In this document: one piece after another, positions 4,499 through 59,320 of the stretch
Position numbering within the stretch: position 1 is the stretch's first letter
Layout: each line of letters opens with the position of its first letter
Assembly: GCA_964036045.1 (NCBI GenBank)
Contig: OZ038379.1
Coordinates: 29,512,001 to 29,576,000, forward strand
Source: Eutreptiella sp. 'Long Island Sound 2002'
Lineage: Eukaryota > Protista > Euglenida
Direction of reading: 5' to 3'
Length of the DNA stretch: 64,000 nt
Notes under the pieces: model-generated
Database searches by the model: none
Told to the model about the DNA's origin: nothing
The model's input: the letters and a program-made list of their open reading frames with translations, nothing else
Translations under genes and position numbers: made by a program

Positions 4499-4840
4499 GC
4501 TCGTGGGTGCGCAGGACCGACGACCGACTGAGGTCAGTTCTCGCTACCCAACCGAAAAAGGTCGAGCGCCCATTCGGATTGCGTGGAATGGTCCGATATT
4601 GTTCCGATTCAAAAAAGGCGCAGGTGAAGGAAATTGTCGTGCGCTATTTGCGGCAATTGAAGGAAAAGGGTGTTCTGGAGACTATTGCACTTCGAAAAGT
4701 GGCAACCAATGGAGCTTCACACGATGAGATTTTTGTGACCCTTGGGGAAAAGAGTCGGCAGTGGCAAGCTCTTCAAGAACGCGGTGGTCAAAAACGCAAC
4801 CGCAGTGATGTTCGTTGCGAAGACATGAAGCGTCGGAAAG
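4499..4840 (+). CDS. Exon, winged-helix-like repeat 1 (phase 1-1, 342 nt)
   Basis: Acceptor ctcgtttag|gc, donor aaag|gtcccg. Peptide [14 protein letters not shown]...GLRGMV...[13 protein letters not shown]...[18 protein letters not shown]. Confidence 0.7.
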
Positions 4841-7800
4841 GTCCCGTGATTTGTTGGCATGTGAGACACGTATCCAATGGGGTTCCGAAGTTTGACCGGG
4901 GTGGACCCGTCCTACTATCCCAACCCGCACCCTTTCCCACCTTCCGGTCAACACAACGCGAGCGACTGTCTTCAACGAACGCCTGTACTTGGATTCTTGT
5001 TTGCATCCACACCAACGCTATGATGCAGTACACCTCTCTAGGCCAACCGCCCTATGCGAGAGTGCACACTCTCTGAACGTTGTGCATCTCTCACTGTTCA
5101 CTAGCCCTCTTAACCCAGAGGAACTCTTTGGCGAACCCCCACATCTGCAGCAATTCTCCGTTGTCCCAGAGGCTCCATGGTCTGTGGTCATCATTAGCCC
5201 TTGCCAACGCTCCCTAGCCGGCTGCGACCCTCCACCTACCCCAACCCTCCACAACTGGACAATCCTCAACCGCCATCGCATACAGGATCCTACAATTCTT
5301 GGGCGATGGGAAGTTGGTGAGCGTGAGGGTTTTACATAGCGAAAGAAGCATTGGTGTGTGACTGTACTGCAAAGTATGCACCATACAGAACCCAAGGTTG
5401 TGTGACAAGTTACCGGTGGACATGATTGTTGCATGCCGTGCATAGGTTACGCAGATCACAAAACGTGGGAAGCACGCGCAGAAGAGAGATTTCAGCTCAT
5501 TCTGAATTGCAATACGGATAGATATGTTGGGCTGCCCACAATCCTTAAGGGCACGAAGAATGAGCACAGGCGCGAGACATGCCAAAAAGTATTTGGTTAT
5601 TTGCGGCAGCTGAAGGTGGCAGGCATTTTAGAGATGGCGGAATTGGAAGTCGTGCGTGGGCATTTTGGTCGTCCACACTCCGATGTAAAGATCAGTCGTG
5701 GGCGGAGATGGCATGAGTGGGTGCCAGGGCTCCCGGGCCCCAGGGTTCCAGAGCAAGCAGGCCGTCGTTGTAAACAAGCATGTCCTGCTGGCCCTCCCAG
5801 TGAAGATCGCAAGACAGGATGTCCGAAAAGACATGACATTTCCACTATGCTTGTCATCGGACGTGACGTCAAAGGTTTGCCCTCGTTGCCCATGGTTGCC
5901 TCAGCCATCATGTCACAACGTGCTGAGCAATATGTGGTGCGTTTTATTTCTTTTGGGGGCACTTCAGAATCCAACCATGCCAACTTTTCACCAAGTCTGG
6001 TGCTTGTGTGGTTTTCATGTCACGTCGTGACAAGTGGTGTCTCAACAGAGCTGAATACAAATTTAGTGCCAGTGAACATGGTAATAATGCTGCAGCCCCC
6101 CCCCACCACCCACCCACCCACCCTCCGGTCGTTTTGTCATACTAGGCTCCCGCCGGCCCCAAAAAATATCCACAATTCAATTGAAAGCAACTCCATGGAC
6201 CCTCTATTGACAGTTATTGACAGTATTAAAAGTCACCTGCTCTGGAATACTGAAAGATTGTTTCATTTCCGTATTTCGACCCACGAGCGGTTTGGGTTTT
6301 GTGTGTGTTAGTTATATAACCGCGGGACGAGACAAAAAATTTCGTAAATTTCCTGCACAATGGTTGAAACAATTTTTAACTCGTGCAACCACAGTTGCGT
6401 TTTCTGGATTTTCGAGATGCATTATTTAACGACGGACGTTCCGTTCTATCTCAATTTATGTCATCGTGGTAACAAGCTTGATCCAGCAGGCCCGTGGCAA
6501 TCAAAATTGCCCAACTGCTCAGGTTAGTTTTTGGTCCACCGTGTGCCGCCTGGATTGACAAATTCTGCAGGTCAGTGAAAGTGACAGTGAAGTGACAGTG
6601 ACGAAATTGACAGTGAGCGTGACAGTGACACTGACAGTGCTCATGCTATTCACGTTATCCCTTAGAACTCGTGTTCTTTCACCATAATGTCGTCAACCTG
6701 TCACCCGGAAATGGGGTGTGAAATGCAGGGAGCGGACTGAGGGTGAGGAGGTTGAGCCTGATTTGTATGCCTGCTCATCAGGGCTATGGCAATCACGAGT
6801 TGTTGAACAGCTGAAGTCGGTCCTTGGCACCTCGAAGGATGAGAAGCCTGAGCTGACGTTCGGATTGTCAAAGATCCTTCAGCGCGCGCCGAGTGACCAA
6901 CGATTGCGTGTAAAGCATCTAATCCGTGAGGTGCTGCGGCGAATGGCGAGGGATGGCGTGTTGGCAAAGGTGTCGCTGCGAAATGTAATGCACCGAGGCA
7001 GGCGCGTCAGCGAAATCTTCGTGAAACCAGGGCATAGGTGTCGTGATTGGATTCTTGCCCGCGGCAAGAGGCTCCAGAACGCAAACCGAGCCCACCGTCC
7101 TCAAGGGCACAGGCAAGGTATGCGTGTGGCAGATGGCTGCTGTTGGCCAATGCGGAAAGACTTGTAGGTAGAAGGGAAGTCCACAAGGGGACATGGGCTG
7201 TCTATCCATACGGAATCTGTCCCGAGCAACCACGTGTCCGTTTTCATCTTGATGCTGAGTGTTTTCGGCATTTTCCTTTTGAGCCCGTTTGTACACCATT
7301 TTTGCTCCACAGAGGGGGCGGGTGGCGGGCCCGGGCAGGCACCATGCGGTTCTCACGGGGGGCGTTGGGGGGCTGGGAGGCACAATGGGTCCCCGACACA
7401 GATTCTTATGCACCAATCAACACCTCCACCTGGACCACGGTATCCCTGACAGGCACCCGTCTTTCCGCCGGGGTCATGCCCAACCTCTGATCTGTGCTGT
7501 AATCCAGCCAGCCCAGAGGCCGAAGAATGTGTTGCCTGGTCGGCTGGCCTGCACGACTGTGGCGCGCACGCTTATGAACCTGACTGACACTGATATTGCC
7601 CTGCTTCTCCCTTTTCCAGAAAAGAAGATATGGGAAGACCGAACAGAGGACCATCTTTGTGTCGTGCTCAACACCAACACTGCAGAAGCAGATTCACGTC
7701 TTGGAATATGCAAATTGCTCTGCAATGGCAAGGACAGAGATCTTCAGAGGCAAAGGATTTTTCGTTACTTGCAGCAGTTGAAAACAGATGGGATCCTAGC

Positions 7801-10800
7801 AAAGGCGGCTTGGGGAACCGGTGTGCACAGAGGTGCCCAATTCCCTGAAGTATACGTCCGTGCGGGTCAGAAGTGGCGCGATTGGGTCAATTGTACGAAC
7901 AAGCAGAAGCAAATGGAGATGGCTACTCCTCTCCCTGAGAAAACCAATGGAACAGAAGTTGCACTGCCCGCCCGTTTTCTCCCAGGTGCGTTTTGACAAG
8001 GCGCACTTTGCAGTGTATTGCACTGTGTAATGCAAACTGGGGGCCATCGACCGACTACAACAGTGGATGCAGATCAAAGGAGTGGCCTCCGAGCTCTCCA
8101 ACAACCCGTTGAACTGCGTGGATTGGGCTCATTTAACGACTCCAACAGAATTGCAACGAAAGGTCATTGATTTGCGATACACAGATAAAGATGAGCCGCT
8201 GGAAATCGACTGCAAGATTAGAGATCACCCTTCCTACGACCTGCCCGCACGGATTTACTCCAATTTGGCATTACACCACAGATAGTGTAAGTCAGATTCT
8301 TCCGTTTGATTTGTCGATCATTTGTCCACCTCAAGTGCAAACAGTACCCCTGGCGGTGTCCAAAGGAAAACTGAACCCACGTAGTTGCCAGATTTTCCAG
8401 TTGCTCCCCATGAAGGATGTTGCTGTTCTCTTTTTTCCTATTTAGGGCAAAAAATTTTCAGGTGAGGGATGGCAACACACGCTCACAAGGCAAACAATCA
8501 GTATTTGGCATGTCATTTTGTGGCAACCAAGCGGAGCCGTCTGGAAATTTCCTCCTACATCATCGCACCTAGTGGTCATGCATCGCACCCGCGTTCATCC
8601 GTTACCGAGGTATCGTGCACCTTGTGGCTTTCGTTTATGGAGCCAAAGCACAGGCATGCAACCCCTGGGCACATCGTCCAGAGACTCCAACGTCCCGTGA
8701 CCAGCACCTCCACATCCGGCTCCATTTCAGTGACCAATGGCCGTCCACTTTGATCGGCATACAATTCATGAACACTCCTCTTTGACACCCCTTGTCTGGC
8801 ACTCGCCCCATCCCATCTGTTCCATACACCCCCTTATGATTCGACACATTGAACCTGGACAAGCAGCGTTTGGTGCGAGGCAACTACGCATGAGTTGTGC
8901 GGCAATGATCGAGGCGCTGGGCTCTATTTTTCTGTGTGGACTGCGAAGTTGCGATCAGTGGAGTACAGACCAAGGAGCACGTACTGTGTTGAATTGGGAA
9001 TAGTTCACCAATCACACATGTTGCATCTCAGTTGGACTTCAGCTTGCCGATTCCCAAGCCCAAGCTAAAAAGCAGGCAGGAGCAGGCATCCGCGCTCACC
9101 GCCACCGAAATCACCAACTCACTGAACCAGGATTTGGGGTCTGTAAAAATGGGGCAAATGGGGAAAACGGGGGGGAATGGGGGAAAATGGAGGAAAATGG
9201 GGGCAAATGGGGGGAAAATGGGGGGAAACGGGGAGTCATCAACAAAGCAGTATGGAAAATGCAGGGACAAATTCAAGAATGGTAGAAAAGTGGGAGAAAA
9301 ATGGGAGACAGAAGGGAGGAAGTGGGACGAAATACCCATTCTTGACAGTCCCATTTCCCCCATTTTTCTAGTGGCCGAAGATCTTCCCCTCAGTTCCCTT
9401 TGTAAAAATGAAGTCACCGAACTCACCGACGGAAGAATGGGAATTTCTGCCACTCACTGACACTCACCGCAACAGCAGCTAGTGTGGAGGCTTGCAGGAG
9501 GCTCCATACCTCGAAATGTGCAAATTTCACGGATATTCACTGCTGCTTCTCAAAACGGTCGAGTGGTTCATAATTTATCGCCTGCAAACATCCGTAAAAG
9601 CTCGAATTTTTGTTTCAGGTCCGTGATTCGTTGTGGACAAGCCCGAGTTCCCAATTATTATGTTGCATCTCCTTTGCAGATTGATTAATTGATATGGTGT
9701 GCTTTCTTTGCAGAAGTGGCATGGCGAATCACCCAAGTCTGTATTTTCGAGGGTATTTGGGCGCTTCATCACCGTTCCGTCCATCGGCTGGTAGGGCTGG
9801 CGGAGGACCTGCGCCCTCCGCCAGAGACAATGTCCATGGCGTCGTTGAAACAGGCAGCTCATGAGTATCAGGGTTGGCTGCCAATGGTCTCTGCGTTAGC
9901 ATAGGCAAATGACCTGGAAGAATTGTTGCGTATAGCGTATGTGTACAGAGTTGGATATTTTTTGAAGGTGGTATGATGTGTATTTCTCAGTAGAGACTCA
10001 GGAGTGCTCTCATGCCAACCCCCTGATGATGATGGCATCTCTCAGCGGTGCACAACCAGTAAGACAGGCGATACTAGACGATGCCCCCCCCCCCCCCCAG
10101 CAGAAGCCCCATATGTAATACATGCCTTCCCATTTTGGATAATTTGGAGCACGGTGAGCTGGCACAAGTCATGTATTCTGCCTCCGCAGAGGTGTCAGAG
10201 ATGATTCAGGAGCAGCCTGCATTCATCAGTGCTCACAAGTGATTATACCCCTGACAGCATATATATGAATCACCATACAATTTTGAGATTCCGACTGCTT
10301 CTCCAGACCTCAGATTGCAGCCAACAGTTGGTACAGAGTATCTTTGCTCTATGTTGAATGGACGAGCGCAGTCGGCAAGACAAAGAGCCAAATGGCACCA
10401 GACAAATCAGAACACCCCCGCAAGTGGAACACAAAGTTCTATAAGCACACGCAGAAGTGGATAATGATAATATTCACCCATTGTGTCATCCACATCGATT
10501 CATGACAAAAGGTTTGGTCGAATCCAAGTTGCTCGGCTAGCCTGAGTGCCAGGTGGGAGCCTCCACCCAAATGCGGCTTTCTTTGTGGCAGGAAAATTGC
10601 GACGTTCCAAACGCAGCAGTTCTGTGGACGCCCTGAAGCCTCAAGCTTCAGATTCAATGCCTGTTGGTATGTGTCTGTGCGGCGCATGTGCATGTGTGAG
10701 TGTGTGGTGTGCATCGCCAGGGAATATCTCAGTGCAAGACAGGTTTGTGCCAGAAAGCTGTCCCTGCAGATGGGCGTGCATATGCTTGCACATATTAAAA

Positions 10801-13800
10801 ACAATTCATTTGGAAAGAAGGAGGTCATAAATGTTTGGTAATGCAACAAACGGCGCTCTTCGAATGAATTAGATTGCCTGCTTGTTTGCCCACAAGAGCG
10901 CTCTTTGCCAATGGGTTGCTGGGAAAGCCAATCAGTCTGACTGGCTGTTTTGAGTGGTTGGTCTTCGTTTGTGCAGGTGTCGATATGTGAACAGCACGTG
11001 CACAGTGCCAGTTTCTAGTTTATGCGGGGACCCTGGGGTGCACAATTCCAGCACTCTATTATGCTGCATGCTCCCTGTTGCACATACATTACTTCTACAG
11101 CCCTGCAGCCCTGAATATCTGTCGCTGTGTTCTCAGGGAGCAAGCTATGGCAGGTGCACTCACGTAAGACTCACAGAGCGTTGGGGGTGCTCTTCCGCTG
11201 TCAATCTGGAGGGTTTCGCCTCTTTCTGACAGCACAGTGTGTGCACAATGAACCAGTGGGCCTGCCCCATTGGGCTGCAGTTTATCTTCATTCCAATTTT
11301 GTCCCAGCCAGCCCAATTACACCTGTCTCTACAGGCCCTCCTTGCATTTTCCCAAGAGCAACGTCCACAGTGTGGACATGTGATGAACGGCTGAGGCTTC
11401 AGAAGGCTTGGAACCGGGCAGTGAAGTCTGACCCTGCCAAGAAAAATTCTGCTGTGATGAAGGCGTTGAATGAGACCGCTGGTGTGCATCAGCTTCAAAA
11501 CGACTGCAGCGCTTATGGAGACCCGGGCATCCCTGTGGGCACAGCTCTCGCATCACGGGCCCTCGCCAACGTCCTGAAGCTGCACACCCCCCCGATGGCT
11601 GGCATTTGGTGTGGGATTGAGCCTAAAGTGTGCCCGTTCCCCATCGTCTTCAGTATTGTCTTCTGTGGAGGGTATTCAGGTGTGCATCTGCAACCATGCA
11701 TGATGCGTGAGCTGAACTGAAACTTGGTGTGCACTATTCGCAAGTGTCATGGAAATGATGTGGGTACTGTGCATACCTATTTGCATTTTTCCCACTTGCC
11801 AGGCATGCAGACCCCTGTCCCAGGGTCATGAATGTTTTTGAAAAGTTTTGCGTTGCAAGCGCTGCAAAAAGCAAGCACTAACACGGACTGCGAACAACAT
11901 GAAATGACAAGGTGCAATTCAGAAACTAAAAGTGTGTTTTGCAAGAGTATGTGATGCATGTAGTTACTGAAATATAGGACACCACCCTGGGGCAAAGTGG
12001 GTCAGTCTGAGAGCAAAGCACCACCGTTGGGCAAGGTTGGAGCCAAAAATTGTCACATTGCATTTATTGTTGACACCATTTGTGTGACACCGCCTTTGGG
12101 CCAGGTGGGTGTTGGTGTCTGTGAGAGGCACTACCATTGGGTAAGGCAGGAGCCAGTTTGAAAATTGATTGTTTTGTCCCCCACTTCCTTACAGCCAGAG
12201 TGACCATGCTGATATGGGATAGTGAGGGCAAAATGACTGCAGGCACCAAACTGCAAGAGCCGCAAGATGCGGCTCCGAGCCACAACAGCCACCAAACGCG
12301 GTTGGTAGGCGCGAATCCTAGCTAGATGAGCCACGAAACGTGGCTCCAAGCTGTGAAATGTATCTCTGAGCTGCAAGATTCGGTTCCATGCTGCGAAACG
12401 AAACTCTGAGCTGCACGAGCAGCGCGAGCCGCGAAGCAAAGCTTCCAGCCACGCCTCCAACCTGCAAGAGCCGCGAGAGCCACAGAGACACAGCCCCAAT
12501 CCGCAACACACGGCTCCGAGTTGCAAGAGCCACAAGACACGGCTGTGAGCTGCTCTGAGCCGCGAGAGACCGAACGTGATGCCAAGTCATAGGAGCCGTG
12601 AAACTGGCTCTCACGGCTCAAAGCCGCGTTTCGTGGCTCAGACCGCTTGGGATCTGCGAGATGCGCAAGAGCGGCAAAACACAGCCCCAAGCAACTCCGA
12701 GCCACGAAACACGGCCCCGAGCCACTCCCAGCCACAAAATGTGGCTCCAAGCCGCTCCAATCAGCGAACCGCACGTATGAACAGCAAAATGCCTGCCGGG
12801 AAACACGGCTCCGAGCCACGATAGCCACTAAACGAGGACGTAAGTAGGGAGACGTAGCTCCTAGCCACAACCTACTAGAGCCGTGAAACAAATCTTTGCG
12901 CCGCAATAGCAGGGCAAGCTGCAAAACACAGCTCCCACGGCTCCCATCTGTTGCGAGGCACACCTCAGAGCCGCAAGAGCCACGAAGCACGGCTTCTAGC
13001 CGCGACTCCTAAGCCGCGGAACCCTGCCTGAGAGCCTCGAGAGCCGCCCATGAAAGCACCGAAACGTGGCTCCGAGCCGCTCGTAGCCGCGAAACACGGC
13101 TGCAAGCCATGAGAGTTGCGAATCACATCTCTGAGCCACAAAGTGCCAAGCTGCAAGAGCTGCGAAACACAGCTCAGAGCCACAACAGCTGCCAAGCGTG
13201 GCCCCGAGTCGCAAGAGTCAGGATACCTGGCTCCAAACCGCGAAAAGCATCTCCTAGCCGCGACCACGGCTCCAAGTCGCGAGAGCCGCGAAAAGCGCCA
13301 CCCAGCTGCGGAACAAATTTCTGAGCTACGAGAATGGTGTGAGCCATGCAACACAGCTTCAAGCCCCTCCACCCATGAAAAGCGCCCCTAAGAGCTATGA
13401 AATGCAACTGTGAGTTGCAAAACGTGGCTGCTAGCTGCGAGAGCCACCGTGGCTGCAACCCCAGCTATGGGTATAGTAACCAAATGGGCTATCAGACTTC
13501 AGACTTCAGACTTGTATGGACCATCACCCCTAACCCCCCACCCCCACCCCAACACCCTTTCTACCCCCCCCCCCCCCGTGTCAGACTCCCCCCCCCCCCC
13601 CCATGTCCCCCCCAATATCAAACTTGTCCATTGTCACCACACCCTTGAGGTGTAGAAGTGGGTTGTGGTCTCGACCCTAGCGTCTAAAACCCAACCAGTG
13701 CTTGCAACCCCTTCAATGATGGTACGTGCCCCCCCCCCCCCCCAGGGCTTCTTTAGAATAATTAAATATCAAGGGGGAGGGGGGTCCAAAACCCCCTTCC

Positions 13801-49800: not shown

Positions 49801-52800
49801 TCTCCGCCCGAGCCTACCTCCCCCAGCCTCTCCCAGCTTCCTTTGCGATCTCCATCAGCCACACCGACCTCACCAACCATCCAAAGCCCTCTCACAGCCC
49901 AAATATCCCTGGTGCCTTCCCAGGTCCTCCTAAACTTTCCTACCAGACTCAGAATTGGTGTTGACCCTTCTACGTGGTCACACATGTTTTCTGGGATACA
50001 CTTGCATACACACCAATATGGCAAGGCATGGACAAGGGGAGAGGAATGTTGGCCACGGCAGCAACATCAAGGGTAGGCACCCCATAAACCTTGCTGTGCA
50101 ATGAATACCCAGTCCAAGGTCCAAGGAAGACCCAGGCACCCATGAGGGGCTTTGGGGACGGGACAGGCAACAATAGAGGTCCCACACTGCTTCATGCCCC
50201 CTTCCACTGACTGTGCAATATTTGCAACTCAGGCCTAGGTTCCATTCACGACTGAGGATTTGGTGCATCCCTACCTGTTAGGTGTGTTGGTCTGGTGTGA
50301 GCAGCCATCCTCAAATGATTTTTGTGTTTTCCTAGATGACATAAGGTTGGGGGATCTAGGCACGTGCTGAGTCCGATGAATGTTTGAGGATAGGAAACTG
50401 GTTTGGTCTGTGTTAATCCAGGAAAATGCCATAGGAGGCAAGACAGCGGCAGCCGAAGAAGGTCAAATGATTCAAAGCTGATTGGGCAGAGCCTGGCAAG
50501 ACAACAGATGTCTGTCTAGCACACCACGTACACAGGGTGAGACACAGTGTTGCCCTGGCAGCGTTGCATCCAGCACTGCCTGAGTTTTGGCGCCAGGTCC
50601 TTTAGGTCCTTTTTCTTCATTACTCAGATTACCAGTCCAGAGGCAGAGCTCTGGTTGCTCCGGCAGTAGCATGCACTTATGTTCGTGTGTGCGGGCTAAA
50701 CCAGTGGCTCTGAAGGAGTTTCCATAGCAGTCGTAAGGCTGTAGGCAATGACGTGCCGCGGTTGCAGGAATGTTGCAGCTACTGGCTAAGCTGGGTTTGG
50801 GAAAACATACCATCCGTGTGTTCTTGCACACTCTTGCATTTTCCCCACATTTTTCCATTGGTGTAGATTGCATGGCAACAGTGAGCCAAAGATCAATAAG
50901 AACATTGGGGGCCGAAAGTGGCGTGAGTTTTGCTGGGGAATTGCGGCAAGCGCCACTGGGGTTTACATAATCTATGACAATGGTTGAGCGAATGGAGGAA
51001 ATGTGCAGAAATATTTGGGAACCATGATGTGTTTGTTTAAAGGGGAGGGGAAATTTTCAGGCGGGGAAAATTTCGTGGAAAGTTTTTCAGGAAGATGGTG
51101 AACCCTCCCCCCCCCCCCGAGTGGCGATCGGCCAGTAGGCGCCGCCAGCTGCAGACGAGATCATCACACCATGGCGTCATGCCAAAACCCCCCCCCCGAG
51201 ATTTTCCCAGGCGAACCAGTGCCCTTACGAAAATTTGCCCTCTCGTGTAGTCCCTTTTGCTCTTTGCAAAAAGGCTCCTGGATGCAGTATCAGAGGTCAA
51301 TATTGTTCGTTTCACTGAGCCACGAAATCCATACCTTTTTATTTGCAGGCAACATGGAGCAGCATCGCTTCTTCATCAATGGCGTGCAAGCGGATTTGAT
51401 GCCGCATCTCCGGCCCTTCTCTTTATGCAATTCTTGGAAGGCCACCAACCTCGTTTCCATGGTGCCTCCGCAAATGACCGAAGAGGACCTGGCATGTGGG
51501 CAGGAGGATTTTAAGATCCCTATTTGCAATCCTGAGGTACTTCTGATTGCTGTGCTGGCGTATGTGCCCCCATTTTTTGGCTGGGATTTCGCTGGGAATG
51601 CATCCCGACGAGTCTCTAGGTCCTGGTTGATCCGGATGAACACCAAGATTTCATTGCGGGGCTGGGAGGGTTTGAATACTGGGAGATAGAATTTCGGATC
51701 CCCACCATTCCATTCCTCAGCCCAACCGGTGCCCAAATTTTCCACGGGGCCCTCTGTCTTTTGCGATGGCTGCTGAGAGACTTGGGACTTGAGGGTAGCA
51801 AGGTTCTGCAACCACTTCTAGGGTCGCAATTGTTCCAGGAGGTCTGAAATCAAGCAGCAAGCAACAGTGTGCAGCAACAAGCAAACAACAGCTGCGATGG
51901 GAGAAAATCAGAACTCAGCCGTAGTGGCTGATTCCGCCCAAACAATGCCCTCCAGTATGGTGTTGGGTCACATACCCAAAACAACTCGTTAGTGGTGGCG
52001 GCTCCAGGTGCTGCAAGTGGAGGTGGTGGGTTCTAGAAACCGTCAAAAATGGGCACAAAATGCTGCCTTTTTTATCTGTTTTGGGTATGGGAGAGGCATT
52101 TGGTGGGTGAGTTTTTCATTGGAACTCACTGACTTGATGGAAAACCTCTTTCATTTGAAAAGTTCTTGTCTCTTGGTGATGTGTTTTCATGACCCCCCCC
52201 CCCAAAAAAAAACACTGTCCACGGGGCGCTTCAGATGACTCCAGATGCCCAAATCATCTCAAATAGAGTATCATACAATCAGTTATGCTATGCGAATGAC
52301 CCCCCAAAAAGGCGGCACATATGGCGCTTGTGCCTGTGCTTGATCTAACAACCTATCGCATGTCGAACCCATTGCAAAATCATCATTTTGGGAGACAAAA
52401 TGATGCCCCAATGAATTTTTCGATTTTGACCCCTCTACCCCCCGTACCTAGGTATCACTTTTTAGGGGGCAGGGTGCGGGGGAGTTGGCGGTCAAAACTT
52501 GGTTGGCCTTTGGCCGCCACTGTGCGTTGATTTGGACCTAGGTTCCACTCCATTTTTTTCTCTGATATGCACCCCCTGACCAGTGATGGGGGTTCTGGGT
52601 GCTATCTCGAAGTTTCCAAGATCAGCCCCCCCCATGGGCCCCACGGGTGAGGAGTTTGCAGTCTTCAGCTGTTGGTTTGGCTGAAAAATCGCAATTTCTG
52701 GGTGACCTCTGACAACTCCCAGGGACCCTTGGGCCGTTGTTGGGTGATCATTTGGTGACAATGGGAGTTACACCCTGTCTTGTTCATGTGCGATGACCGA

Positions 52801-54352
52801 TAGCGGACACATTTATTCAGGGTCTGCCTTTGCCAAAGATCATCTACTCAAGGGTATGTGTGGAGATTGGTGACGATAATGAAAGCGAGCAAGCCAGTCT
52901 GCAGCACACCCCATATGATCATTTTCACTGGGGTGACATTTGGAAAGAGGCACATGTAAAGCCGCTGGATATTAGTTTTGTGGATCCGTTTGACAAAAAT
53001 GGGCGTATACTGCACTGGTGGGTGGACAGGTGCTGATTCTTCTTGTCTTCTGTCGTTGTGCAGTCGAGCCAACCTCCCGTCGCCACACTCCGCAATTTGG
53101 TACCGGAATTGTTATTGTTCCAGCATTTATCCTCAAGATGAGTTTTTCAGCATCAACTCCATTTTCTCTCTAGTGCCAGATCTTAGTTGTAGTATCTGAA
53201 GGAGTATCAAAGCAACGCAAATGGTGCTGTGACACCATGCTTTTCTGAGTATGTTGGAACGTTTGTTTTCCCAATTTTGGTTGGAAACGCTGGCCACCTG
53301 CCATCTGTTGATCTTCATCGCCCCTTGATGCTTGGAACCCCCCTCTCTCTCTGTTTGTTTCCCCTTTTGTCTGCAATTCTCTGTTTTGTCTCTCCTGTGA
53401 CAATTGTGGGGCTATGTGTTGCCCATCTTCCTGCGCTGGTCTCACCCACCCTCAGTCCTGCAATCTCGGCACACCCTGCATCAGATGAAAAACGCCACAT
53501 GCTGTGGGCCCCATGGGATAGGGCGGATTGGGTGATCTGTACGACTGCACACAGTCGGAATAAGCCGTTATGAATTGGTTTTTGTGATTCCTCCCTTTGC
53601 TCAACTATGGCAGCTTTGGGGGCATCAAAATGATTGATGAAAAGCAACTCAACACTACTGCCAGTTTGTCGAAGTAGCGAGGCGACTCCAACTCATATGT
53701 GTACACCCATCCACAGGCTGGTAAGGAGGGCAATGCAGACAACTGTTGTGTGCCATGGATGGTGTCATTCGAGGAGTCCTCCCCCTTGGTCTGCGCTTGG
53801 GTCCTCCACACTCAACACGGTGGCAGGGCTGATTGGACATGCTACTTGCAGTTGCTTTGTCCAGTGGAGTCTGCCCATTCTGTCCGGTGTGCCGCCCATA
53901 TATGCCCACCTTCGAGTTCTCAATGGGATTTGAAATGTGAACATTTGATGAAATCTAAGGCCCCAAAGCGCCGCACAGGAATTCGGCTTTTCCTGGTTCG
54001 TCCAGTCGTGTCGGATGCTATCCTCATGTTGTGTGGGATGTCAATGTTCTGTCATTTCTTCAGTGTAGGTGGTTCTTGGGCGCTGGTAACGCATAATTTG
54101 ACTGAAGTGTGTGTATTAATTTGTTCAACTGCTAAAGCTGTGGGGGATCATGCCGGCAGACTGATGTGTGTGTGTGTGTGTGTGTCTGTGTGTGTCTTTC
54201 TGAGTGTCTGTTTTTTTTTTCGAAAGGCGCCTAGCCACATGACATTATTTCTAATAGCCCAACGAAGAGTCTTCACGTCCAGGCCCAGTGTTTTGTCATG
54301 CCATCCGCAGGGCGTTGGTCGGCTGTTGGTGTGTCTGCATAGTGTGTGTGTG

Positions 54353-54387
<35 letters not shown>

Positions 54388-56395
54388 GTGCATGTGTGCG
54401 TGCGTGTGTGCGTGCGTGGGTGTTGTGCGTGCGTGTTGTGGGTGTGGGTGTGGGTGTGGGTGTGGGTGTGGGTGTGGGTGTGGGTGTGGGTGTGGGTGTG
54501 GGTGTGTGTGTGGGTGTGTGTGTGTTTGTGTTTGTGTTTGTGTTTGTGTTTGTGTGTGTGTGTGTGTGTGTCTGTGTGTGTGTGTGTGTCTGTGTGTGTG
54601 TGTGTGTCTGTGTGTGTGTGTGTCTTTGCCTGTGACTCCTCACGGATGATTTCAAACATTCCCGTATCCTGTTTCCCGTATCACTGCAGAAAGGCACCTA
54701 GCCTAATGACTTCATGACAGCTTCAATGCTTTGCCCTGCTTTGTGCTGTTTTGATTGCTCACTGGCCTGACGAGGTGTTCTGGGTGCCATCCGATCCGCA
54801 GTGCTCGTGCTAAGTGACAGTGGTCTTATCGTTTGGTTCCTGCACAAGTGTGTGTGTGTGTGTGTGCGCGCGTGCTTGCGCACGCGCCCGGTGACCAAGA
54901 GGATCTGTGCACATGCTCCTGTGTGCAGGTATTTTGACATTGCTTTCCAGAAGTATCGAAACGTCGTGTCCCACGGGGTGAAAAAGCACGTGGAACTGTA
55001 TTGGGCTGGACCCGAACTGCGCTGGGGAGTACGTGCTCTGGAGGACATCAAGAAGGGGGAGTTTGTGATGACGTACGTTGGAGAAGTCATTACAGATTGT
55101 GAGGTATAGCGAGATGGTGGTGAGATGGTGCACATGACAATCTGGAAGTAAGTAAAACGAATTGAGGGTGCTGTCCTGCAGGGCATGCATGTGCCCTGTG
55201 GCATGCCCTGGGGTCGCATGCATAAGAGTAACCAAGGCAAAATACCGGTGTGGCAGGTTTTGGATGCAACGGTTCATGTGTGGATATATTGTCTCACGGC
55301 ATGCAAATGTGGCGCTTCTTTGTGACATAGCAACACATGATACACTTCAGCTGATTGGCAAGAAAGACAAGTTGTTGATGGATAGGGGAAAAGGGCATGT
55401 GTTGGCATGAGCATGTGTGAAACCAGCCAGAAGAACCCAAACTGCAAACCAGTTTTCAACATTGGTCTCAATCCTTGGTGAAGGACACTCAACGTCGCCA
55501 TTGTATCACATAACTACTGCTGCATGGTGAAGAGTAGGCTTTATTTTTTCACTTTTCTTGCGATCAATGTCCGATGCACGGTCCTACTATTGTGGCACCC
55601 GCTGCTGTAAGCATGCACCTGCTGCATGCTGTAAGCAACCTGTAGTGAACACTGGGTATCACCATCTGCAGCCTCATATTTGGATTCACTGTGTACAATG
55701 AGTTCCCTCCATACTGCAGCCACAGCTGTAGTCACTGTTCCATGTCATGGGCTCTGTTAGGGGGCCCATATTCCGGTTTTGTCTGTTGTTGGGGGAGGAG
55801 GTGGGGGGTTCCACTTTGAGCAGCAAAAAAGGCCACTGTCAAAGAAAAACTTTGCTGCAGCCTTTGGCCTTCTTCATGCCGCTTCAGTCAATTATAAGCA
55901 TTTTCAGTGCAATATTGACATGTGGGGGTGGGAGGGGGGTAGGATGCTTGGGTACGCAAGCTGGATGAGACGAATCGCTGAGCGAACATTTTTGACCACC
56001 GTTCTTAGCATCACTGGGAACCAGACTGGTCACGGCATCATTTTCAGGCTGAGAAGCGTGGTCTCATCTCCGGTCACCATGCCAATTGCAAGATCATGAT
56101 GATGAACGTGCCAGCACACACCGACGATATCCACACGTTCGTGAGGCACGTGGATGCTCAGTTCCTGAGCAACGCCGCTGCGTTCCTTAACCACAGCTGC
56201 AATCCAAATTTAGTCATGGTCAACGTCTACGTCCCCAAGCAGCCCATGCCCATGTTTGCATTTTTTGCCACTGATGATATCAAGAAACATGAGGTGATGA
56301 CAACGTCGTACAACTGGTACAACAAGGATCTGGGGCGGCCTGGGACGGTCCCCTGTCACTGTGGGTACAAGGATTGTTGCGGATGGTTGAAGTGA
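4499..56395 (+). CDS. Multi-exon SUVH/KYP-like histone lysine methyltransferase: 4x winged-helix-like repeat - SRA/YDG - possible beta-grasp insert - atypical pre-SET - SET - post-SET
   Basis: Exon model: 4499-4840, 5446-5874, 6782-7117, 7620-7985, 11335-11679, 24782-24986, 44548-44750, 47887-48249, 51349-51536, 52821-53029, 54929-55103, 56048-56395. All junctions are GT-AG and phase-compatible, about 1,170 codons. The SRA-to-SET part is well supported; attachment of the first four exons and the 5' end are less certain. Confidence 0.75.
5446..5874 (+). CDS. Exon, winged-helix-like repeat 2 (phase 1-1, 429 nt)
   Basis: Acceptor gtgcatag|gt, donor aaag|gtttgc (donor position least certain of the four). 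Peptide [14 protein letters not shown]...GLPTIL...[13 protein letters not shown]...[18 protein letters not shown]. Confidence 0.65.
6570..6640. repeat. Short degenerate (GTGACA)n tandem repeat in intron
   Basis: gtgaaagtgacagtgaagtgacagtgacgaaattgacagtgagcgtgacagtgacactgacagtg. Confidence 0.75.
6782..7117 (+). CDS. Exon, winged-helix-like repeat 3 (phase 1-1, 336 nt)
   Basis: Acceptor gctcatcag|gg, donor caag|gtatgc. Peptide [14 protein letters not shown]...GLSKIL...[13 protein letters not shown]...[18 protein letters not shown]. Confidence 0.72.
7620..7985 (+). CDS. Exon, winged-helix-like repeat 4 (phase 1-1, 366 nt)
   Basis: Acceptor ctgcttctcccttttccag|aa, donor ccag|gtgcgt. Peptide [14 protein letters not shown]...GICKLL...[13 protein letters not shown]...[18 protein letters not shown]. 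Confidence 0.75.
9090..9470 (+). repeat. Dispersed repeat with a GGGGAAAAT-rich core; related cores at about 16465-16560, 43250-43450 and 44280-44340 (reverse) and 48500-48560
   Basis: Repeated ggggaaaatgg/gggcaaatgg units flanked by ctcaccgc/ctcactga motifs; the complementary cccattttcccc motif occurs at the other sites. Confidence 0.7.
11335..11679 (+). CDS. Exon, N-terminal part of SRA/YDG domain (5' boundary uncertain)
   Basis: [34 protein letters not shown]...[10 protein letters not shown] matches the SRA motifs G.iPGipVG...R...H.P..AGI and SIVxxGGY. Donor tattcag|gtgtgc (phase 1). Acceptor ctctacag|gc is tentative because the frame is open from 11127. Confidence 0.9.
12240..13460 (+). 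repeat. Degenerate GAGCC/GGCTC hairpin satellite, block 1
   Basis: Dozens of variants of gagccgcgaaacacggctccaagcc, e.g. gagccacgaaacgtggctc at about 12330. Confidence 0.9.
15142..15320. repeat. (CACAG)n-like pentamer followed by (CCCT)n microsatellite
   Basis: gcacagcacagcacggcacaacacagcacatcacagc... then ctccctccctccctccctcc. Confidence 0.9.
15488..15935 (+). repeat. Minisatellite, 20-22 bp unit (CCCCCTCCGTGAATTATTTAC), about 22 copies
   Basis: GTGAAT counted 22 times at 20-22 bp spacing. Confidence 0.95.
15936..16460 (+). repeat. Minisatellite, about 39-41 bp unit (ACACCACCTCAGTGGAATATTTATCCAGAGGGGGGGGT), about 13 copies
   Basis: The cacctcagtggaat core recurs about 13 times with variable G-run length. 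Confidence 0.95.
16760..19630. repeat. Degenerate GAGCC/GGCTC hairpin satellite, block 2, with orientation switches
   Basis: Same motif family; A-rich orientation (gagccgcgaaac) alternates with T-rich orientation (gtttcgcggctc, cttggagcc), switching near 17.2, 17.55, 18.45 and 19.3 kb. Confidence 0.9.
21770..22170 (-). repeat. Degenerate GAGCC/GGCTC hairpin satellite, block 3
   Basis: ctcgtggctc, gcggctccgagccac, gcggcttggagc, ctctgagccac motifs. Confidence 0.8.
24782..24986 (+). CDS. Exon, central SRA/YDG domain
   Basis: [15 protein letters not shown]...[25 protein letters not shown]...YLPPQGYR matches D.G..l.YTG.G, Q.L..GN.AL and PVRVIRG. Acceptor gctgcag|aa (phase 1), donor tacag|gttaga (phase 2). 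Confidence 0.92.
25605..25760. repeat. GGGAACA/GGGTACA repeat cluster with internal hairpin; same family at 30145-30470, 31980-32315 and 34440-34665
   Basis: Shared motifs gttggggaaca, gggtacacgtgtaccc and ggtaacaaaat(a/g)(a/g)tgttcccc. catgtacccgcata (about 25624) is the reverse complement of tatgcgggtacatg (about 34539). Confidence 0.8.
25888..28764 (+). mobile_element. Full-length pogo-type (IS630/Tc1/mariner superfamily) DNA transposon, 2,877 bp
   Basis: TA|CCCTCCCCCCCCCGTGCCCAAGAACCA (25888-25914) and TGGTTCTTGGGCACGGGGGGGGAGGG|TA (28739-28764) are inverted, differing only by one base in the C/G run. TA on both sides; internal transposase. Confidence 0.93.
26155..28481 (+). CDS. pogo-type DDD transposase, two exons (26155-27110, 27197-28481), 746 aa, apparently intact
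   Basis: CENP-B/Tc5-type HTHs ([10 protein letters not shown]...AARIYKV; [12 protein letters not shown]...[11 protein letters not shown]...[12 protein letters not shown]). Intron tacag|gtccgt...ctttgcag|g (86 bp, phase 2) joins the two ORFs in frame. Catalytic GDETSV, VDGAPSH and TPWAQACD, with 35 residues between the 2nd and 3rd Asp. Confidence 0.9.
28767..32547 (+). pseudogene. Multi-exon gene for a charged low-complexity protein with a Tudor-like start and a CxxC-x12-CxxC zinc ribbon; disrupted
   Basis: GT-AG exons: [31 protein letters not shown] (to 28858), [21 protein letters not shown]-rich exons, [21 protein letters not shown] (about 31320-31385), last exon 32323-32547. In-frame TAG at 31164-31166, an apparent 1-nt deletion in exon 31711-31772, and the pogo insertion at its 5' end. 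Confidence 0.6.
33085..34286 (+). pseudogene. Decayed piggyBac-type transposase
   Basis: [31 protein letters not shown]...YIYKGK (D1 region), LVCASFFGS (D2 replaced by A), [14 protein letters not shown] (D3 region), C-terminal CKQC...CSAC...HVKCFGVHH cysteine-rich domain. TAG at 33322-33324 and two frame changes. Confidence 0.85.
35440..37150. pseudogene. Fragments of an unclassified transposase-like gene family; N-terminal half on - strand (about 35.45-36.40 kb), C-terminal half on + strand (about 36.40-37.15 kb)
   Basis: Peptides [10 protein letters not shown] and [14 protein letters not shown] (- strand) and [19 protein letters not shown] and [13 protein letters not shown] (+ strand). The first four match RCPLDVH, DGNIHYRMTKLCYS, GIRHPYKY and LDYIPALFLL of the 63.2-64 kb copy. 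Stops and frameshifts present. Confidence 0.6.
37688..37960. repeat. Dispersed repeat family; second copy at about 47065-47345, partial copy at about 41790-41885
   Basis: ggggagcacctgac, gcaagacgaggc and ttgctcttt(g/c)aagatcccgccctcgaagct(g/c)agccccggc shared between copies. Confidence 0.8.
42565..42845 (+). repeat. Partial copy of the telomere-like-repeat MITE family (see 58536-59320)
   Basis: gtcctaggac...ggggcctccgtccaac...tgccaaagg...tttgcacccca...tatccttaaacccaacc followed by degenerate CCCTAA/CCCTAC hexamers, collinear with 58560-58915. Confidence 0.8.
44548..44750 (+). CDS. Exon, C-terminal SRA (YDG motif) plus linker
   Basis: Acceptor gctgtgcag|a completes AGA (R), giving [14 protein letters not shown]...FRIWRYHM. 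Donor ttag|gtgctg (phase 1) has the same context as the donor at 53030. Confidence 0.88.
44945..45787. mobile_element. Non-autonomous TA-flanked element (Tc1/mariner/pogo-type MITE), 843 bp
   Basis: TA|CCGTGTGAATTCTAAAGATTTGCGAAAAT versus the reverse complement of ATTCCGCGAAGCTTTAGGATCTGCACGG|TA (imperfect TIR of about 30 bp). Internal direct repeat acgcaaaaatgggttccgc at about 45048 and 45638. Confidence 0.75.
47887..48249 (+). CDS. Probable internal exon (phase 1-1, 363 nt); joined to the previous exon it gives a beta-grasp/ubiquitin-like pattern
   Basis: Acceptor gtcctcag|gt, donor cttg|gtatgc, open 121-codon frame. The join reads [38 protein letters not shown]. Confidence 0.55.
51349..51536 (+). 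CDS. Exon, entry into pre-SET-like region
   Basis: Acceptor tttatttgcag|gc (phase 1), donor cctgag|gtactt (phase 0). [17 protein letters not shown] resembles the D(I/L)SxGxExxPIpxxN start of pre-SET in SUVH/G9a-type proteins. Confidence 0.8.
52821..53029 (+). CDS. Exon, atypical pre-SET-like region
   Basis: Acceptor atttattcag|ggt (phase 0), donor gacag|gtgctg (phase 2). [14 protein letters not shown]...[10 protein letters not shown] resembles P..F.Y and PYd..GrL. Confidence 0.75.
54150..54630. repeat. Compound TG/TGGGTG/TTTGTG microsatellite in intron
   Basis: (TG)n, (GTGTGG)n and (GTGTTT)n runs. Confidence 0.95.
54929..55103 (+). CDS. Exon, N-terminal SET domain
   Basis: Acceptor gtgtgcag|g (phase 2), donor tgtgag|gtatag. 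RNVVSHG...[28 protein letters not shown]. Confidence 0.92.
56048..56395 (+). CDS. Last exon, C-terminal SET plus post-SET
   Basis: Acceptor cattttcag|gct (phase 0). AEKR...[20 protein letters not shown]...[19 protein letters not shown]...[14 protein letters not shown]-stop, with the NHSC motif and post-SET CxC-x4-C. Confidence 0.95.
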   Translation, partial: AEKRGLISGHHANCKIMMMNVPAHTDDIHTFVRHVDAQFLSNAAAFLNHSCNPNLVMVNVYVPKQPMPMFAFFATDDIKKHEVMTTSYNWYNKDLGRPGTVPCHCGYKDCCGWLK

Positions 56396-58535: not shown

Positions 58536-59320
58536 CCCGGGGGGGGGGGGGGGCGACTCCGCAGGTCCTAGGACGCCAACTACCCCTGCTCCCCCCCCCC
58601 TAGGGGCCTCCGGCCAACAGTTAGTTGCCAAAGGTGACACCCTTAGGAGTCCATGGGCGCCAAAGGTGCCCGATGCTCCATGGGCACCAAAGCCGCCCAA
58701 AGGAAAATTTTGTCCATTTTGCACCCCAACACTATCCTTAAACCCAACCCTGACCGTAACACCCAACCCAACCCTCAGCCTAATCCTAACCCTACCCTTA
58801 CCCCTACCCCTACCCCTAGCCCTAAGCCTAGCCCTAGCCCTAACCCTAACCCTACCCCTCGCTCTAACCCTAACCGTAGCTCTTCCCCTAACCGTAGCTC
58901 TAACCCTACGCTAGGGTCAGAGTTATTGTTGGGGTCCAAAATGGAGAGCAATGATGTGGCAAAAGCCGCCATGAACGAAATTTGGGGGATCTTGTTCAGC
59001 CTAATCAACATGGCTGGCATGGCTGAACCAGTTCGCTGCAAAGGTTAGGGTTAGGTTTATGGTGATGGTATGGTTAGAGGGAGGGCAAGGGGAGGTAAGG
59101 GAAGCCTGTGCCCCCCCCGCCCCCACCACCCCAAATCGCCCCACCTGGACTGGACCCCCCCCCCCCTAACCGACCCTCCCGGACCCCCCCCCCCCCCCAA
59201 GCCCCTCCCAGACCCCCCCCCCCCCCCCCCGTCCCCCCCCCCCCCGGGGGGGGGCCTCCGGCCAACAATTAGTCAGGGGGGTAGTTGGCGTCTAGAACCG
59301 AGGAGTCGCCCCCCCCGGGG
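58536..59320. mobile_element. Non-autonomous TIR element with 8-bp target duplication (hAT-like by TSD length) carrying degenerate telomeric repeats
   Basis: GGGAAGGA at 58528-58535 and 59321-59328. Left arm cccgggg...ggcgactccgcaggtcctaggacgccaactacccc is the imperfect reverse complement of right arm ggggtagttggcgtctagaaccgaggagtcgccccccccgggg. CCCTAA-like array about 58737-58915 and TTAGGG-like tract about 59042-59077. Confidence 0.78.

What the first reader, a model, noticed from the sequence alone, without database searches (positions are those of the whole stretch)
4499..56395. Hidden 52-kb gene for a SUVH-like SRA-SET methyltransferase with a new domain architecture
Seen: twelve GT-AG exons scattered over 52 kb join in compatible phases into one frame of about 1,170 codons: 4x wHTH-like - SRA/YDG - possible beta-grasp insert - pre-SET-like - SET - post-SET. 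The SRA is split over three exons separated by 13.1-kb and 19.6-kb introns, so the ORF track shows only fragments. Established: SRA plus SET in one chain is the hallmark of plant and green-algal SUVH/KRYPTONITE proteins, which couple methylated-DNA reading to H3K9 methylation. Inference: this is a divergent DNA-modification-to-histone-methylation coupler with extra DNA/chromatin-binding modules that I do not know from any SUVH. If the host is a euglenophyte, origin from the green-algal plastid endosymbiont is plausible.
Basis: partly seen in the sequence, partly recalled or inferred. Interest (0 to 1): 0.9.

Follow-up and report, generated by a model that had tools for sequence, protein, structure and literature searches.

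The report
Giant split SRA-SET chromatin gene
This euglenid alga has a real gene, spread over about 74 kb in 15 coding pieces, for a protein that joins a reader of modified DNA to a histone-methylating enzyme; an intron-free copy elsewhere in the genome proves every splice junction, and the pairing is known from plants while the extra parts are new.

Summary
Observation confirmed to the base. That copy starts with a spliced-leader relic, so it is a retrocopy of the mature mRNA and records how the window gene is spliced.

Corrections:
- The junction 7985 to 11335 is wrong. A 75-nt exon (10592-10666) lies between.
- Two more coding exons lie about 17.4-17.9 kb before the window start.
- The gene therefore has 15 coding exons over about 74 kb.
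- The protein has five winged-helix-like repeats, not four.

Pfam on the full protein finds a complete SAD_SRA (102 bits) and SET (67 bits) but no Pre-SET. That stretch has 4 cysteines instead of about 9. Post-SET and the SET catalytic motifs are kept. The "beta-grasp" insert could not be assessed.

The gene is "hidden" only in the window. The retrocopy is a plain ORF already tagged SAD_SRA + SET.

No orthologue turned up in any protein search. Green-algal origin is untested, because the SRA is equally close to plant SUVH and to bacterial SRA-HNH proteins.

Verdict: a real, divergent SUVH-like reader-writer, a new variant of a known kind. The scan had noted parts of it on this same window only.

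The parts
4499..4840 (+).
   Evidence: Exact match to L002 5371-5712. Repeat alignments. AlphaFold model pLDDT 76.6 with H-H-H-hairpin-H topology.
5446..5874 (+). Coding exon 4: winged-helix-like repeat 3, phase 1-1
   Evidence: Exact match to L002 5713-6141.
6782..7117 (+). Coding exon 5: winged-helix-like repeat 4, phase 1-1
   Evidence: Exact match to L002 6142-6477.
7620..7985 (+). Coding exon 6: winged-helix-like repeat 5, phase 1-1
   Evidence: Exact match to L002 6478-6843.
10592..10666 (+).
   Evidence: L002 6844-6918 matches the window exactly here. Acceptor ...gtggcag| and donor |gtatgt.
11335..11679 (+). Coding exon 8: helix before the SRA, plus SRA N-terminal third ending GGYS
   Evidence: Pfam SAD_SRA profile positions 3-51. 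Exact match to L002 6919-7263.
24782..24986 (+). Coding exon 9: SRA middle with the base-flipping pocket (Y-S-E-S...Y-T-G-E-G)
   Evidence: Pfam SAD_SRA profile positions 41-118, 48 bits. Exact match to L002 7264-7468. Alignment.
44548..44750 (+). Coding exon 10: SRA C-terminal part (YDGLY...) and linker
   Evidence: Pfam SAD_SRA profile positions 114-146. Exact match to L002 7469-7671.
47887..48249 (+). Coding exon 11: 121-residue insert with no recognisable family
   Evidence: Exact match to L002 7672-8034. No Pfam hit. No Atlas look-alike above 0.60. AlphaFold pLDDT 36.6.
51349..51536 (+). Coding exon 12: start of the region before SET, with the KMT1 N-flank motif [12 protein letters not shown]
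   Evidence: Exact match to L002 8035-8222. Joint to the next exon seen in runs X7 and X8. Sub-threshold match to the same motif in SETMAR and EHMT1.
52821..53029 (+). Coding exon 13: cysteine-poor stretch where Pre-SET would lie
   Evidence: Exact match to L002 8223-8431. Joints 51536>52821 and 53029>54929. No Pre-SET by Pfam. Cys count and shuffle test.
54929..55103 (+). Coding exon 14: N-terminal half of SET (RWGVRA, YVGE)
   Evidence: Pfam SET profile positions 2-27. About 50% identical to G9a/GLP over 48 residues. Exact match to L002 8432-8606.
56048..56395 (+). Coding exon 15: C-terminal half of SET (NHSCNPN, catalytic Tyr), post-SET CxCxxxxC, stop codon
   Evidence: Pfam SET profile positions 51-105. 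PDB alignments to SETMAR and EHMT1. Exact match to L002 8607-8954.
56396..59452 (+). 3' UTR as recorded in the retrocopy (56396-58535 plus 59320-59452). The 784-nt inverted-repeat element at 58536-59319 is absent from the retrocopy.
   Evidence: blastn of L002 against the window. 3 mismatches and 5 gap positions in 2.1 kb. Ends of the element.

Best explanation
The window holds 13 of the 15 coding exons of a nuclear gene of a euglenid alga. The gene spans about 74 kb from start codon to stop, and its introns are filled with transposons and repeats.

The mRNA receives the spliced leader at an AG site 52 nt before the start codon, and all introns are removed at GT-AG sites. It encodes a 1,317-residue protein with this layout:
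- five PadR/RTP-like winged-helix repeats (1-615)
- a basic linker
- a helix plus a complete SRA base-flipping domain (701-857)
- a 121-residue insert of unknown fold
- a cysteine-poor stretch in place of Pre-SET
- a KMT1 (SUV39/G9a/SETMAR)-type SET domain (1176-1291)
- a post-SET

Shown: the gene structure, the processing of the mRNA, the identity and order of the domains, and the retention of the two stacking tyrosines, an acidic pocket residue, NHSC, the catalytic Tyr and the post-SET cysteines.

Inferred: the SRA flips out a modified cytosine (5mC or 5hmC), and the SET then methylates a nearby histone H3 tail (K9-like site). Marked DNA, probably transposons, would thereby acquire repressive histone methylation as in plant SUVH4/5/6. 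The winged-helix array would add DNA or chromatin anchoring.

A very recent LINE-type retroposition made an intact intronless twin on another contig, so the cell now has two genes for the same protein.
For: Gene structure:
- 12 exons form one frame.
- All 12 are exact and abutting in the intronless ORF of L002.
- There are 0 differences in 4,005 nt between the spliced parent and the retrocopy.

Retrocopy origin:
- The retrocopy carries the leader relic CTGAGTGTCTATTCTTTTTCG exactly where the parent has ...ttttag|ACTTCG.
- ORFs with RVT_1 lie on both sides of it.

Transcription:
- The exon 12-13 joint and an exon 15 contig, with no intron cover apart from repeat-family matches, are present in an estuary metatranscriptome, X8.

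Domains:
- Pfam gives SAD_SRA 3.7e-29 and SET 1.7e-18 on P0022.
- The spliced SRA is 34% identical to a plant SUVH over 210 residues, E 2e-23.
- By PDB sequence, the best SRA matches are SUVH9 at 66.7 bits, TagI at 62.6 and UHRF1 at 55.
- The best SET matches are SETMAR at 71, EHMT1/2 at 69 and SUV39H2 at 60.

SRA pocket:
- Y...Y are 12 residues apart with Glu at +2. In SUVH5 that position holds Asp418, and UHRF2 uses Glu498 (PMC4740795).

Repeats:
- Five copies share invariant W, G, L, G, L, G, G, W.
- The AlphaFold model has pLDDT 76.6 and pTM 0.63.
- Nearly all of the best structural matches are winged helices: SarR Z 7.1, kleisin WHD, MarR, PadR, RTP.

Context:
- Euglena DNMT1 is reported to branch within chlorophytes (PMC12344493).
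Against: - No biochemical data exist, and neither the ligand nor the substrate was tested.
- The Zn3Cys9 Pre-SET that all characterised KMT1 enzymes carry is missing.
- The GWG motif reads RWG.
- The SRA pocket motif YEDD, conserved in all compared SRAs, reads YSES.
- Because the two copies are identical in the coding part, the RNA contigs cannot say which copy is expressed.
- The joints seen in runs X4, X5 and X7 may come from retrocopy DNA. Those runs also cover introns at similar depth.
- Structure hits for the repeats are only Z 5-7 and Foldseek E about 0.05, which fits a fold class but no family.
- The 52% identity over 48 residues to a plant SUVH is no higher than the 44-53% identity of the hits to bacterial SRA-HNH proteins.
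Confidence: 0.75

Rival explanations
1. The protein binds modified DNA but is catalytically dead. It would act as a recruiter or scaffold, like Arabidopsis SUVH2/SUVH9, with the five winged helices and the insert serving as docking surfaces.
For: No Pre-SET zinc cluster. The first Gly of GWG is replaced by Arg. The best SRA match in the PDB is SUVH9, an inactive member.
Against: NHSC, YxGE, the catalytic Tyr and a complete post-SET CxCxxxxC are all kept, whereas SUVH2/9 lack the post-SET (established knowledge). SET enzymes without Pre-SET, such as SET7/9 and SET8, are active (established knowledge).
Confidence: 0.2
2. The SRA reads a base other than 5mC, for example 5hmC, 5-hydroxymethyluracil or base J (which I recall as reported in Euglena). 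It would couple that mark to histone methylation.
For: The pocket motif YEDD, invariant in nine compared SRAs, is YSES here, and GG after YTG is GR.
Against: Both stacking tyrosines and an acidic residue at the SUVH5 Asp418 position are kept. A Glu plays this role in the 5hmC-preferring UHRF2. An acid there fits a cytosine N4 amino group better than a uracil O4 (inference).
Confidence: 0.08
3. Only the intronless retrocopy is now used. The 74-kb parent would be a redundant copy on its way to decay.
For: The coding sequences are identical, so all RNA evidence fits the retrocopy as well.
Against: The parent has no disabling change in 4,005 nt and keeps all 14 intron boundaries between its coding exons as GT-AG. 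The retroposition is so recent (3 mismatches in 2.1 kb of UTR) that the parent was clearly expressed a short time ago.
Confidence: 0.15
4. The winged-helix exons and the SRA-SET exons belong to separate genes.
For: Before the retrocopy was found, the join 7985 to 11335 had no support, and exon 6 is followed by an in-frame stop 9 nt after its donor.
Against: The retrocopy carries all parts in one uninterrupted ORF behind a single leader relic.
Confidence: 0.02

Closest known systems
Plant SUVH4/KRYPTONITE, SUVH5, SUVH6 (SRA-PreSET-SET-PostSET H3K9 methyltransferases)
   Same: SRA lies N-terminal to a KMT1-type SET in one chain. A helix precedes the SRA. The long loop before GGY (PI..SI.) has plant SUVH length. 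Post-SET is present. The SRA is 34-36% identical to a plant SUVH.
   Different: No Zn3Cys9 Pre-SET. A 121-residue insert lies between SRA and SET. Five N-terminal winged-helix repeats are added. The pocket reads YSES instead of YEDD. The SET scores higher against SETMAR and G9a than against SUVH4/6. Clade membership was not tested.
Chlorophyte class IV-1B SRA-SET proteins without Pre-SET (Chlorella vulgaris, Micromonas pusilla; PMC5725981)
   Same: SAD_SRA is followed by SET with no detectable Pre-SET. They come from green algae, the lineage that gave euglenids their plastid.
   Different: No winged-helix array is reported for them. I could not fetch their sequences, so similarity and phylogeny are untested.
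Arabidopsis SUVH2/SUVH9
   Same: SUVH9 is the best SRA match among solved structures (66.7 bits). They are SRA-SET proteins with a degenerate catalytic region.
   Different: They keep Pre-SET but lack post-SET and a complete SAM pocket. Here it is the reverse.
Animal G9a/GLP (EHMT2/1) and SETMAR SET domains
   Same: Highest SET scores (69-71 bits). About 50% identity over the N-SET. The SET insert is short and the post-SET is the same.
   Different: They carry ankyrin repeats or a transposase, have no SRA, and have a full Pre-SET.
UHRF1/UHRF2
   Same: The SRA domain flips a base between two aromatic residues. The PGIPVGT motif is identical.
   Different: There the SRA is coupled to a RING ubiquitin ligase, not to a SET domain.

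Membership tests
SUVH (plant/green-algal SRA-SET H3K9 methyltransferases) | Complete SAD/SRA domain | tested here: met
   Pfam PF02182, 101.8 bits, profile positions 3-146 of 148, on P0022 701-857.
SUVH (plant/green-algal SRA-SET H3K9 methyltransferases) | SRA N-terminal to SET in the same polypeptide | tested here: met
   One ORF in L002 and the same exon order in the window.
SUVH (plant/green-algal SRA-SET H3K9 methyltransferases) | Pre-SET Zn3Cys9 cluster between SRA and SET | tested here: not met
   No PF05033 hit even at E up to 10. 4 Cys against 10 in the plant SUVH P0012. Alignment score reached by 36 of 300 shuffles. Class IV-1B green-algal members also lack it.
SUVH (plant/green-algal SRA-SET H3K9 methyltransferases) | Placement inside the SUVH clade in SRA and SET trees | not tested
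   All large protein searches returned no orthologue or too few sequences. Pairwise scores do not separate plant from bacterial SRAs.
KMT1 / SUV39-type SET methyltransferases | SET with NHSCxPN, YxGE, catalytic Tyr, and best similarity to KMT1 members | tested here: met
   [15 protein letters not shown] and the Tyr aligned to G9a FDY. The top PDB hits are SETMAR, EHMT1/2 and SUV39H2. GWG reads RWG.
KMT1 / SUV39-type SET methyltransferases | Post-SET CxCxxxxC | tested here: met
   C-H-C-G-Y-K-D-C at the C-terminus, aligned to the SETMAR post-SET.
KMT1 / SUV39-type SET methyltransferases | H3K9 methyltransferase activity | not testable with these tools
   Needs an enzyme assay.
SRA 5mC readers | Two stacking aromatic residues 12 apart and an acidic residue reading the Watson-Crick edge | tested here: met
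   Y(0), E(+2), Y(+12). SUVH5 uses Tyr416, Asp418 and Tyr428, and UHRF2 uses Glu498. The usual Asp at +3 is Ser.
Winged helix-turn-helix (PadR/RTP/MarR-like) | H1-(S1)-H2-H3-hairpin wing topology, with matches to solved winged helices | tested here: inconclusive
   Model pLDDT 76.6 with the right topology. Nearly all of the best hits are winged helices, but at Z 5-7.1, Foldseek E 0.05 or more and TM about 0.4-0.55. The profile against PDB gives RTP only at E 0.93. No Pfam family matches.
Processed retrocopy (for locus L002) | Loss of all introns at exact exon junctions, plus a mature-mRNA 5' end | tested here: met
   All 15 coding exons abut, with 0 differences. A leader relic sits at the parent's AG acceptor. 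No poly(A) tail is seen at its 3' end.

The most novel reading that the evidence does not exclude
The altered SRA pocket (YSES for YEDD) reads a base other than 5mC, such as 5-hydroxymethyluracil or base J of euglenozoans.
Probability: 0.07. Interest if true: 0.9.

Novelty: new variant of a known kind. Interest (0 to 1): 0.55.

Why it matters
Coupling of a DNA-modification reader to a histone H3K9-type methyltransferase in one chain is the core of the self-reinforcing silencing loop of plants. It is described from land plants and green algae.

Finding an intact, recently transcribed version in a euglenid (Discoba host, green-algal plastid) raises two possibilities. The loop may be older than Viridiplantae, or it may have moved with the endosymbiont. 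A published result fits the second idea: Euglena DNMT1 branches among chlorophytes (PMC12344493).

The protein also shows that a KMT1-type SET with post-SET can persist without the Pre-SET zinc cluster. It adds an array of five winged helices not known from any SUVH.

On the practical side, the intronless twin gives a ready full-length coding sequence for expression and assays. It also shows how retrocopies can be used to validate giant split genes in this genome.

Tried and rejected
- A search of 1.84 billion representatives with the SRA middle exon gave only 16 hits and no orthologue. The best was a plant SUVH at 44%.
- Two scans of metagenome contigs found nothing. One used the predicted exon 14/15 junction and one used an exon 15 word.
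- Profile and single-sequence searches with the repeats and with the insert returned only this genome's own ORFs.
- A full-length search with P0022 690-1317 returned only an animal NSD1 at E 2.6e-6, so no tree could be built.
- AlphaFold of the insert alone failed (pLDDT 36.6), and the structure quota was then spent, so the full-length protein was not modelled.
- The codon-usage log-odds test gave differences too small to use.
- I first read the read laying joints as proof of splicing. After finding the retrocopy I downgraded them, because runs X4, X5 and X7 also cover introns and may be DNA.
- I considered CAHAPVC upstream of 54929 as a remnant of the CxCxxxC motif. The retrocopy shows it is intronic.
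- I rejected the separate-gene model and the pseudogene model.

Full report
**What the window shows**

The window is eukaryotic DNA of about 52% G+C with (GT)n microsatellites and many repeats. Pfam places SAD_SRA profile positions 3-51, 41-118 and 114-146 on pieces at 11.5, 24.8 and 44.5 kb. It places SET positions 2-27 and 51-105 on pieces at 55.0 and 56.1 kb.

Reading the boundaries by hand, GGYS|E|[14 protein letters not shown] and PPQGY|R|YDGLY are restored across introns of 13,102 and 19,561 nt, with GT-AG ends and matching phases. The spliced SRA aligns without breaks to a plant SUVH at 34% identity over 210 residues, E 2e-23. A plant SUVH maps collinearly on the exons.

**Decisive evidence: an intronless twin**

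- The 90% cluster of the exon-11 ORF contains a 1,317-residue protein, P0022.
- It is encoded by a single uninterrupted ORF (L002 5001-8954) on another 1.34-Mb contig of the same ENA assembly. ORFs with reverse-transcriptase domains lie on both sides.
- Each of the twelve exons occurs there as an exact match, and they abut one another.
- The one gap, 75 nt between exons 7620-7985 and 11335-11679, matches window 10592-10666. That stretch has its own AG and GT.
- The first 370 nt of the ORF and the 52-nt 5' UTR are absent from the window. By walking up the contig I found them as two exons, L005 8147-8216 and 8360-8710. These lie about 17.9 and 17.4 kb before the window start.
- The parental mRNA assembled from all 15 exons (4,005 nt) is identical to the retrocopy.
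- The parent has ...aattttag|ACTTCG at the start of exon 1. At that point the retrocopy has CTGAGTGTCTATTCTTTTTCG|ACTTCG, which matches the euglenid spliced leader as I recall it. A second such relic lies in the window at 54197-54220.

L002 is therefore a copy of a mature, trans-spliced and fully cis-spliced mRNA. It records the splicing pattern of the window gene.

The match continues through a 2.27-kb 3' UTR, window 56396-58535 and 59320-59452, with 3 mismatches and 5 gap positions in the first 2.1 kb. No poly(A) tail is visible at the end of the retrocopy.

**RNA data**

On 50500-56499, the joined forms 51536>52821 and 53029>54929 appear in contigs of runs X7, X8 and X5. X4, X5 and X7 are of unknown type and also cover introns at similar depth. 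They may be DNA, in which case their joints come from the retrocopy.

X8 is an estuary metatranscriptome. Apart from repeat-family matches, it shows only exonic contigs (exons 12-13 joined, and exon 15). At least one of the two identical copies is therefore transcribed in nature. Which one is not known.

**The protein**

*Overall domains.* Pfam on P0022 gives SAD_SRA 701-857 (101.8 bits) and SET 1176-1291 (67.4 bits), and nothing else significant.

*N-terminal repeats.* The first 615 residues are five repeats sharing invariant W, G, L, G, L, G, G, W at 23-32% identity.
- One repeat, modelled with its paralogues as the alignment, gives pLDDT 76.6 and pTM 0.63. Its topology is helix, short helix, long helix, beta-hairpin, helix.
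- Nearly all of the best structural matches are winged helices: SarR Z 7.1, kleisin WHD 6.9, MarR, CodY, PadR and RTP. Their scores fit a fold class but no specific family.
- The sequence profile reaches RTP only at E 0.93.
- Language-model neighbours are HxlR and HTH_36-type clusters at 0.90 or below.
- No relative of the repeat was found outside this gene.

*SRA pocket.* Both stacking tyrosines are kept, 12 residues apart. The YEDD motif, invariant in the nine SRAs compared, reads YSES. The published SUVH5 structure uses Asp418 at +2 from the first Tyr, and UHRF2 uses a Glu (PMC4740795). Here +2 is Glu.

*Loop before GGY.* Its length and its PI..SI pattern are those of plant SUVH rather than of the shorter bacterial form.

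*Insert.* After the SRA comes a 121-residue insert, on one exon, with no Pfam hit, no Atlas neighbour above 0.60, and an unusable model.

*Region before SET.* It opens with [12 protein letters not shown], which echoes the N-flank of SETMAR and EHMT1. It contains 4 cysteines against 10 in a plant SUVH. Pfam does not recognise it as Pre-SET, and its alignment to a plant pre-SET is no better than 36 of 300 shuffles.

*SET.* It is KMT1-like: SETMAR 71 bits, EHMT1/2 69, SUV39H2 60, against NSD3 54. NHSCNPN, YVGE, the catalytic Tyr and a complete CxCxxxxC post-SET are present. GWG reads RWG.

**Mechanism**

The most likely reading is a reader-writer like plant SUVH4/5/6. The SRA flips out a modified cytosine, and the SET methylates a nearby H3 tail. 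The winged-helix array adds DNA or chromatin contacts. The gene and protein architecture are shown. The ligand, the substrate and the role of the repeats are inferred.

Context that fits: this genome is packed with transposons, including inside this gene's introns, and Euglena DNMT1 is reported to branch within chlorophytes (PMC12344493).

Rivals: an inactive recruiter like SUVH2/9, because Pre-SET is missing; a reader of another base, because of the YSES pocket; and a parent copy now made redundant by the retrocopy.

**Comparison and novelty**

SRA followed by SET is the SUVH hallmark. SRA-SET without Pre-SET is already described for Chlorella and Micromonas (PMC5725981). The core is therefore a known kind.

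The new parts are the five winged-helix repeats, the orphan insert, the altered pocket and the euglenid host.

No orthologue appeared in any search. The SRA scores alike against bacterial SRA-HNH proteins and a plant SUVH. The proposed green-algal origin stays open.

The gene is hidden only at this locus. The retrocopy is a plain ORF with SAD_SRA and SET on record. The scan had noted the repeats and the SRA pocket on this same window.

Noticed in passing
L002 4928-11215 (contig ctg10654 of the same assembly): Intact intronless retrocopy of the whole gene: leader relic, 52-nt 5' UTR, 3,954-nt ORF and 2.27-kb 3' UTR. It is identical to the spliced parent over 4,005 nt, has no visible poly(A) tail, and lies between ORFs with RVT_1 domains.
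   Followed up: yes
window 58536-59319: A 784-nt element in the parent's 3' UTR with inverted ends (CCCGGGG...GCGACTCC / GGAGTCGCCCC...GGGG) and a possible AAGGA duplication. It is absent from the retrocopy. It is either a transposon that arrived after retroposition or a piece removed from the mRNA like a euglenid non-conventional intron. Its ends are not GT-AG.
   Followed up: partly
window 54197-54220: Spliced-leader-like relic TTTCTGAGTGTCTGTTTTTTTTTT inside the intron between exons 13 and 14, next to a repeat that read laying skipped. It is probably the 5' end of a retroposed element. No shuffle of the window gave a match.
   Followed up: partly
window 26023-28481: Two overlapping plus-strand ORFs (429 and 454 aa) in the 19.6-kb intron, with weak HTH_Tnp_Tc5 and DDE_1 hits: a pogo/Tc5-like transposase.
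   Followed up: partly
window 33328-34286: Frame-shifted ORF pieces with a DDE_Tnp_1_7 (piggyBac-type) hit at 1.4e-7: a decayed piggyBac-like transposase in the same intron.
   Followed up: no
window 30181-30461 and 32036-32315: Two tandem arrays rich in the palindrome GGGTACACGTGTACCC flank a 1.6-kb stretch. They recall the palindrome-bearing transposons noted elsewhere in this genome.
   Followed up: no
window 15487-16461: About 1 kb of tandem repeats (21/41-nt and 39-nt units) inside the 13.1-kb intron.
   Followed up: no
window 24784-24984 (P0022 about 755-775): The SRA pocket motif reads GGYSESVD...YTGEGR instead of GGYEDDxD...YTGxGG, which was conserved in all nine SRAs compared. A Glu sits at the position of SUVH5 Asp418.
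   Followed up: partly
L005 8147 (about 17.9 kb before the window start): The leader-addition site of this gene can be read directly: ...aattttag|ACTTCG in the parent, against leader relic|ACTTCG in the retrocopy.
   Followed up: yes
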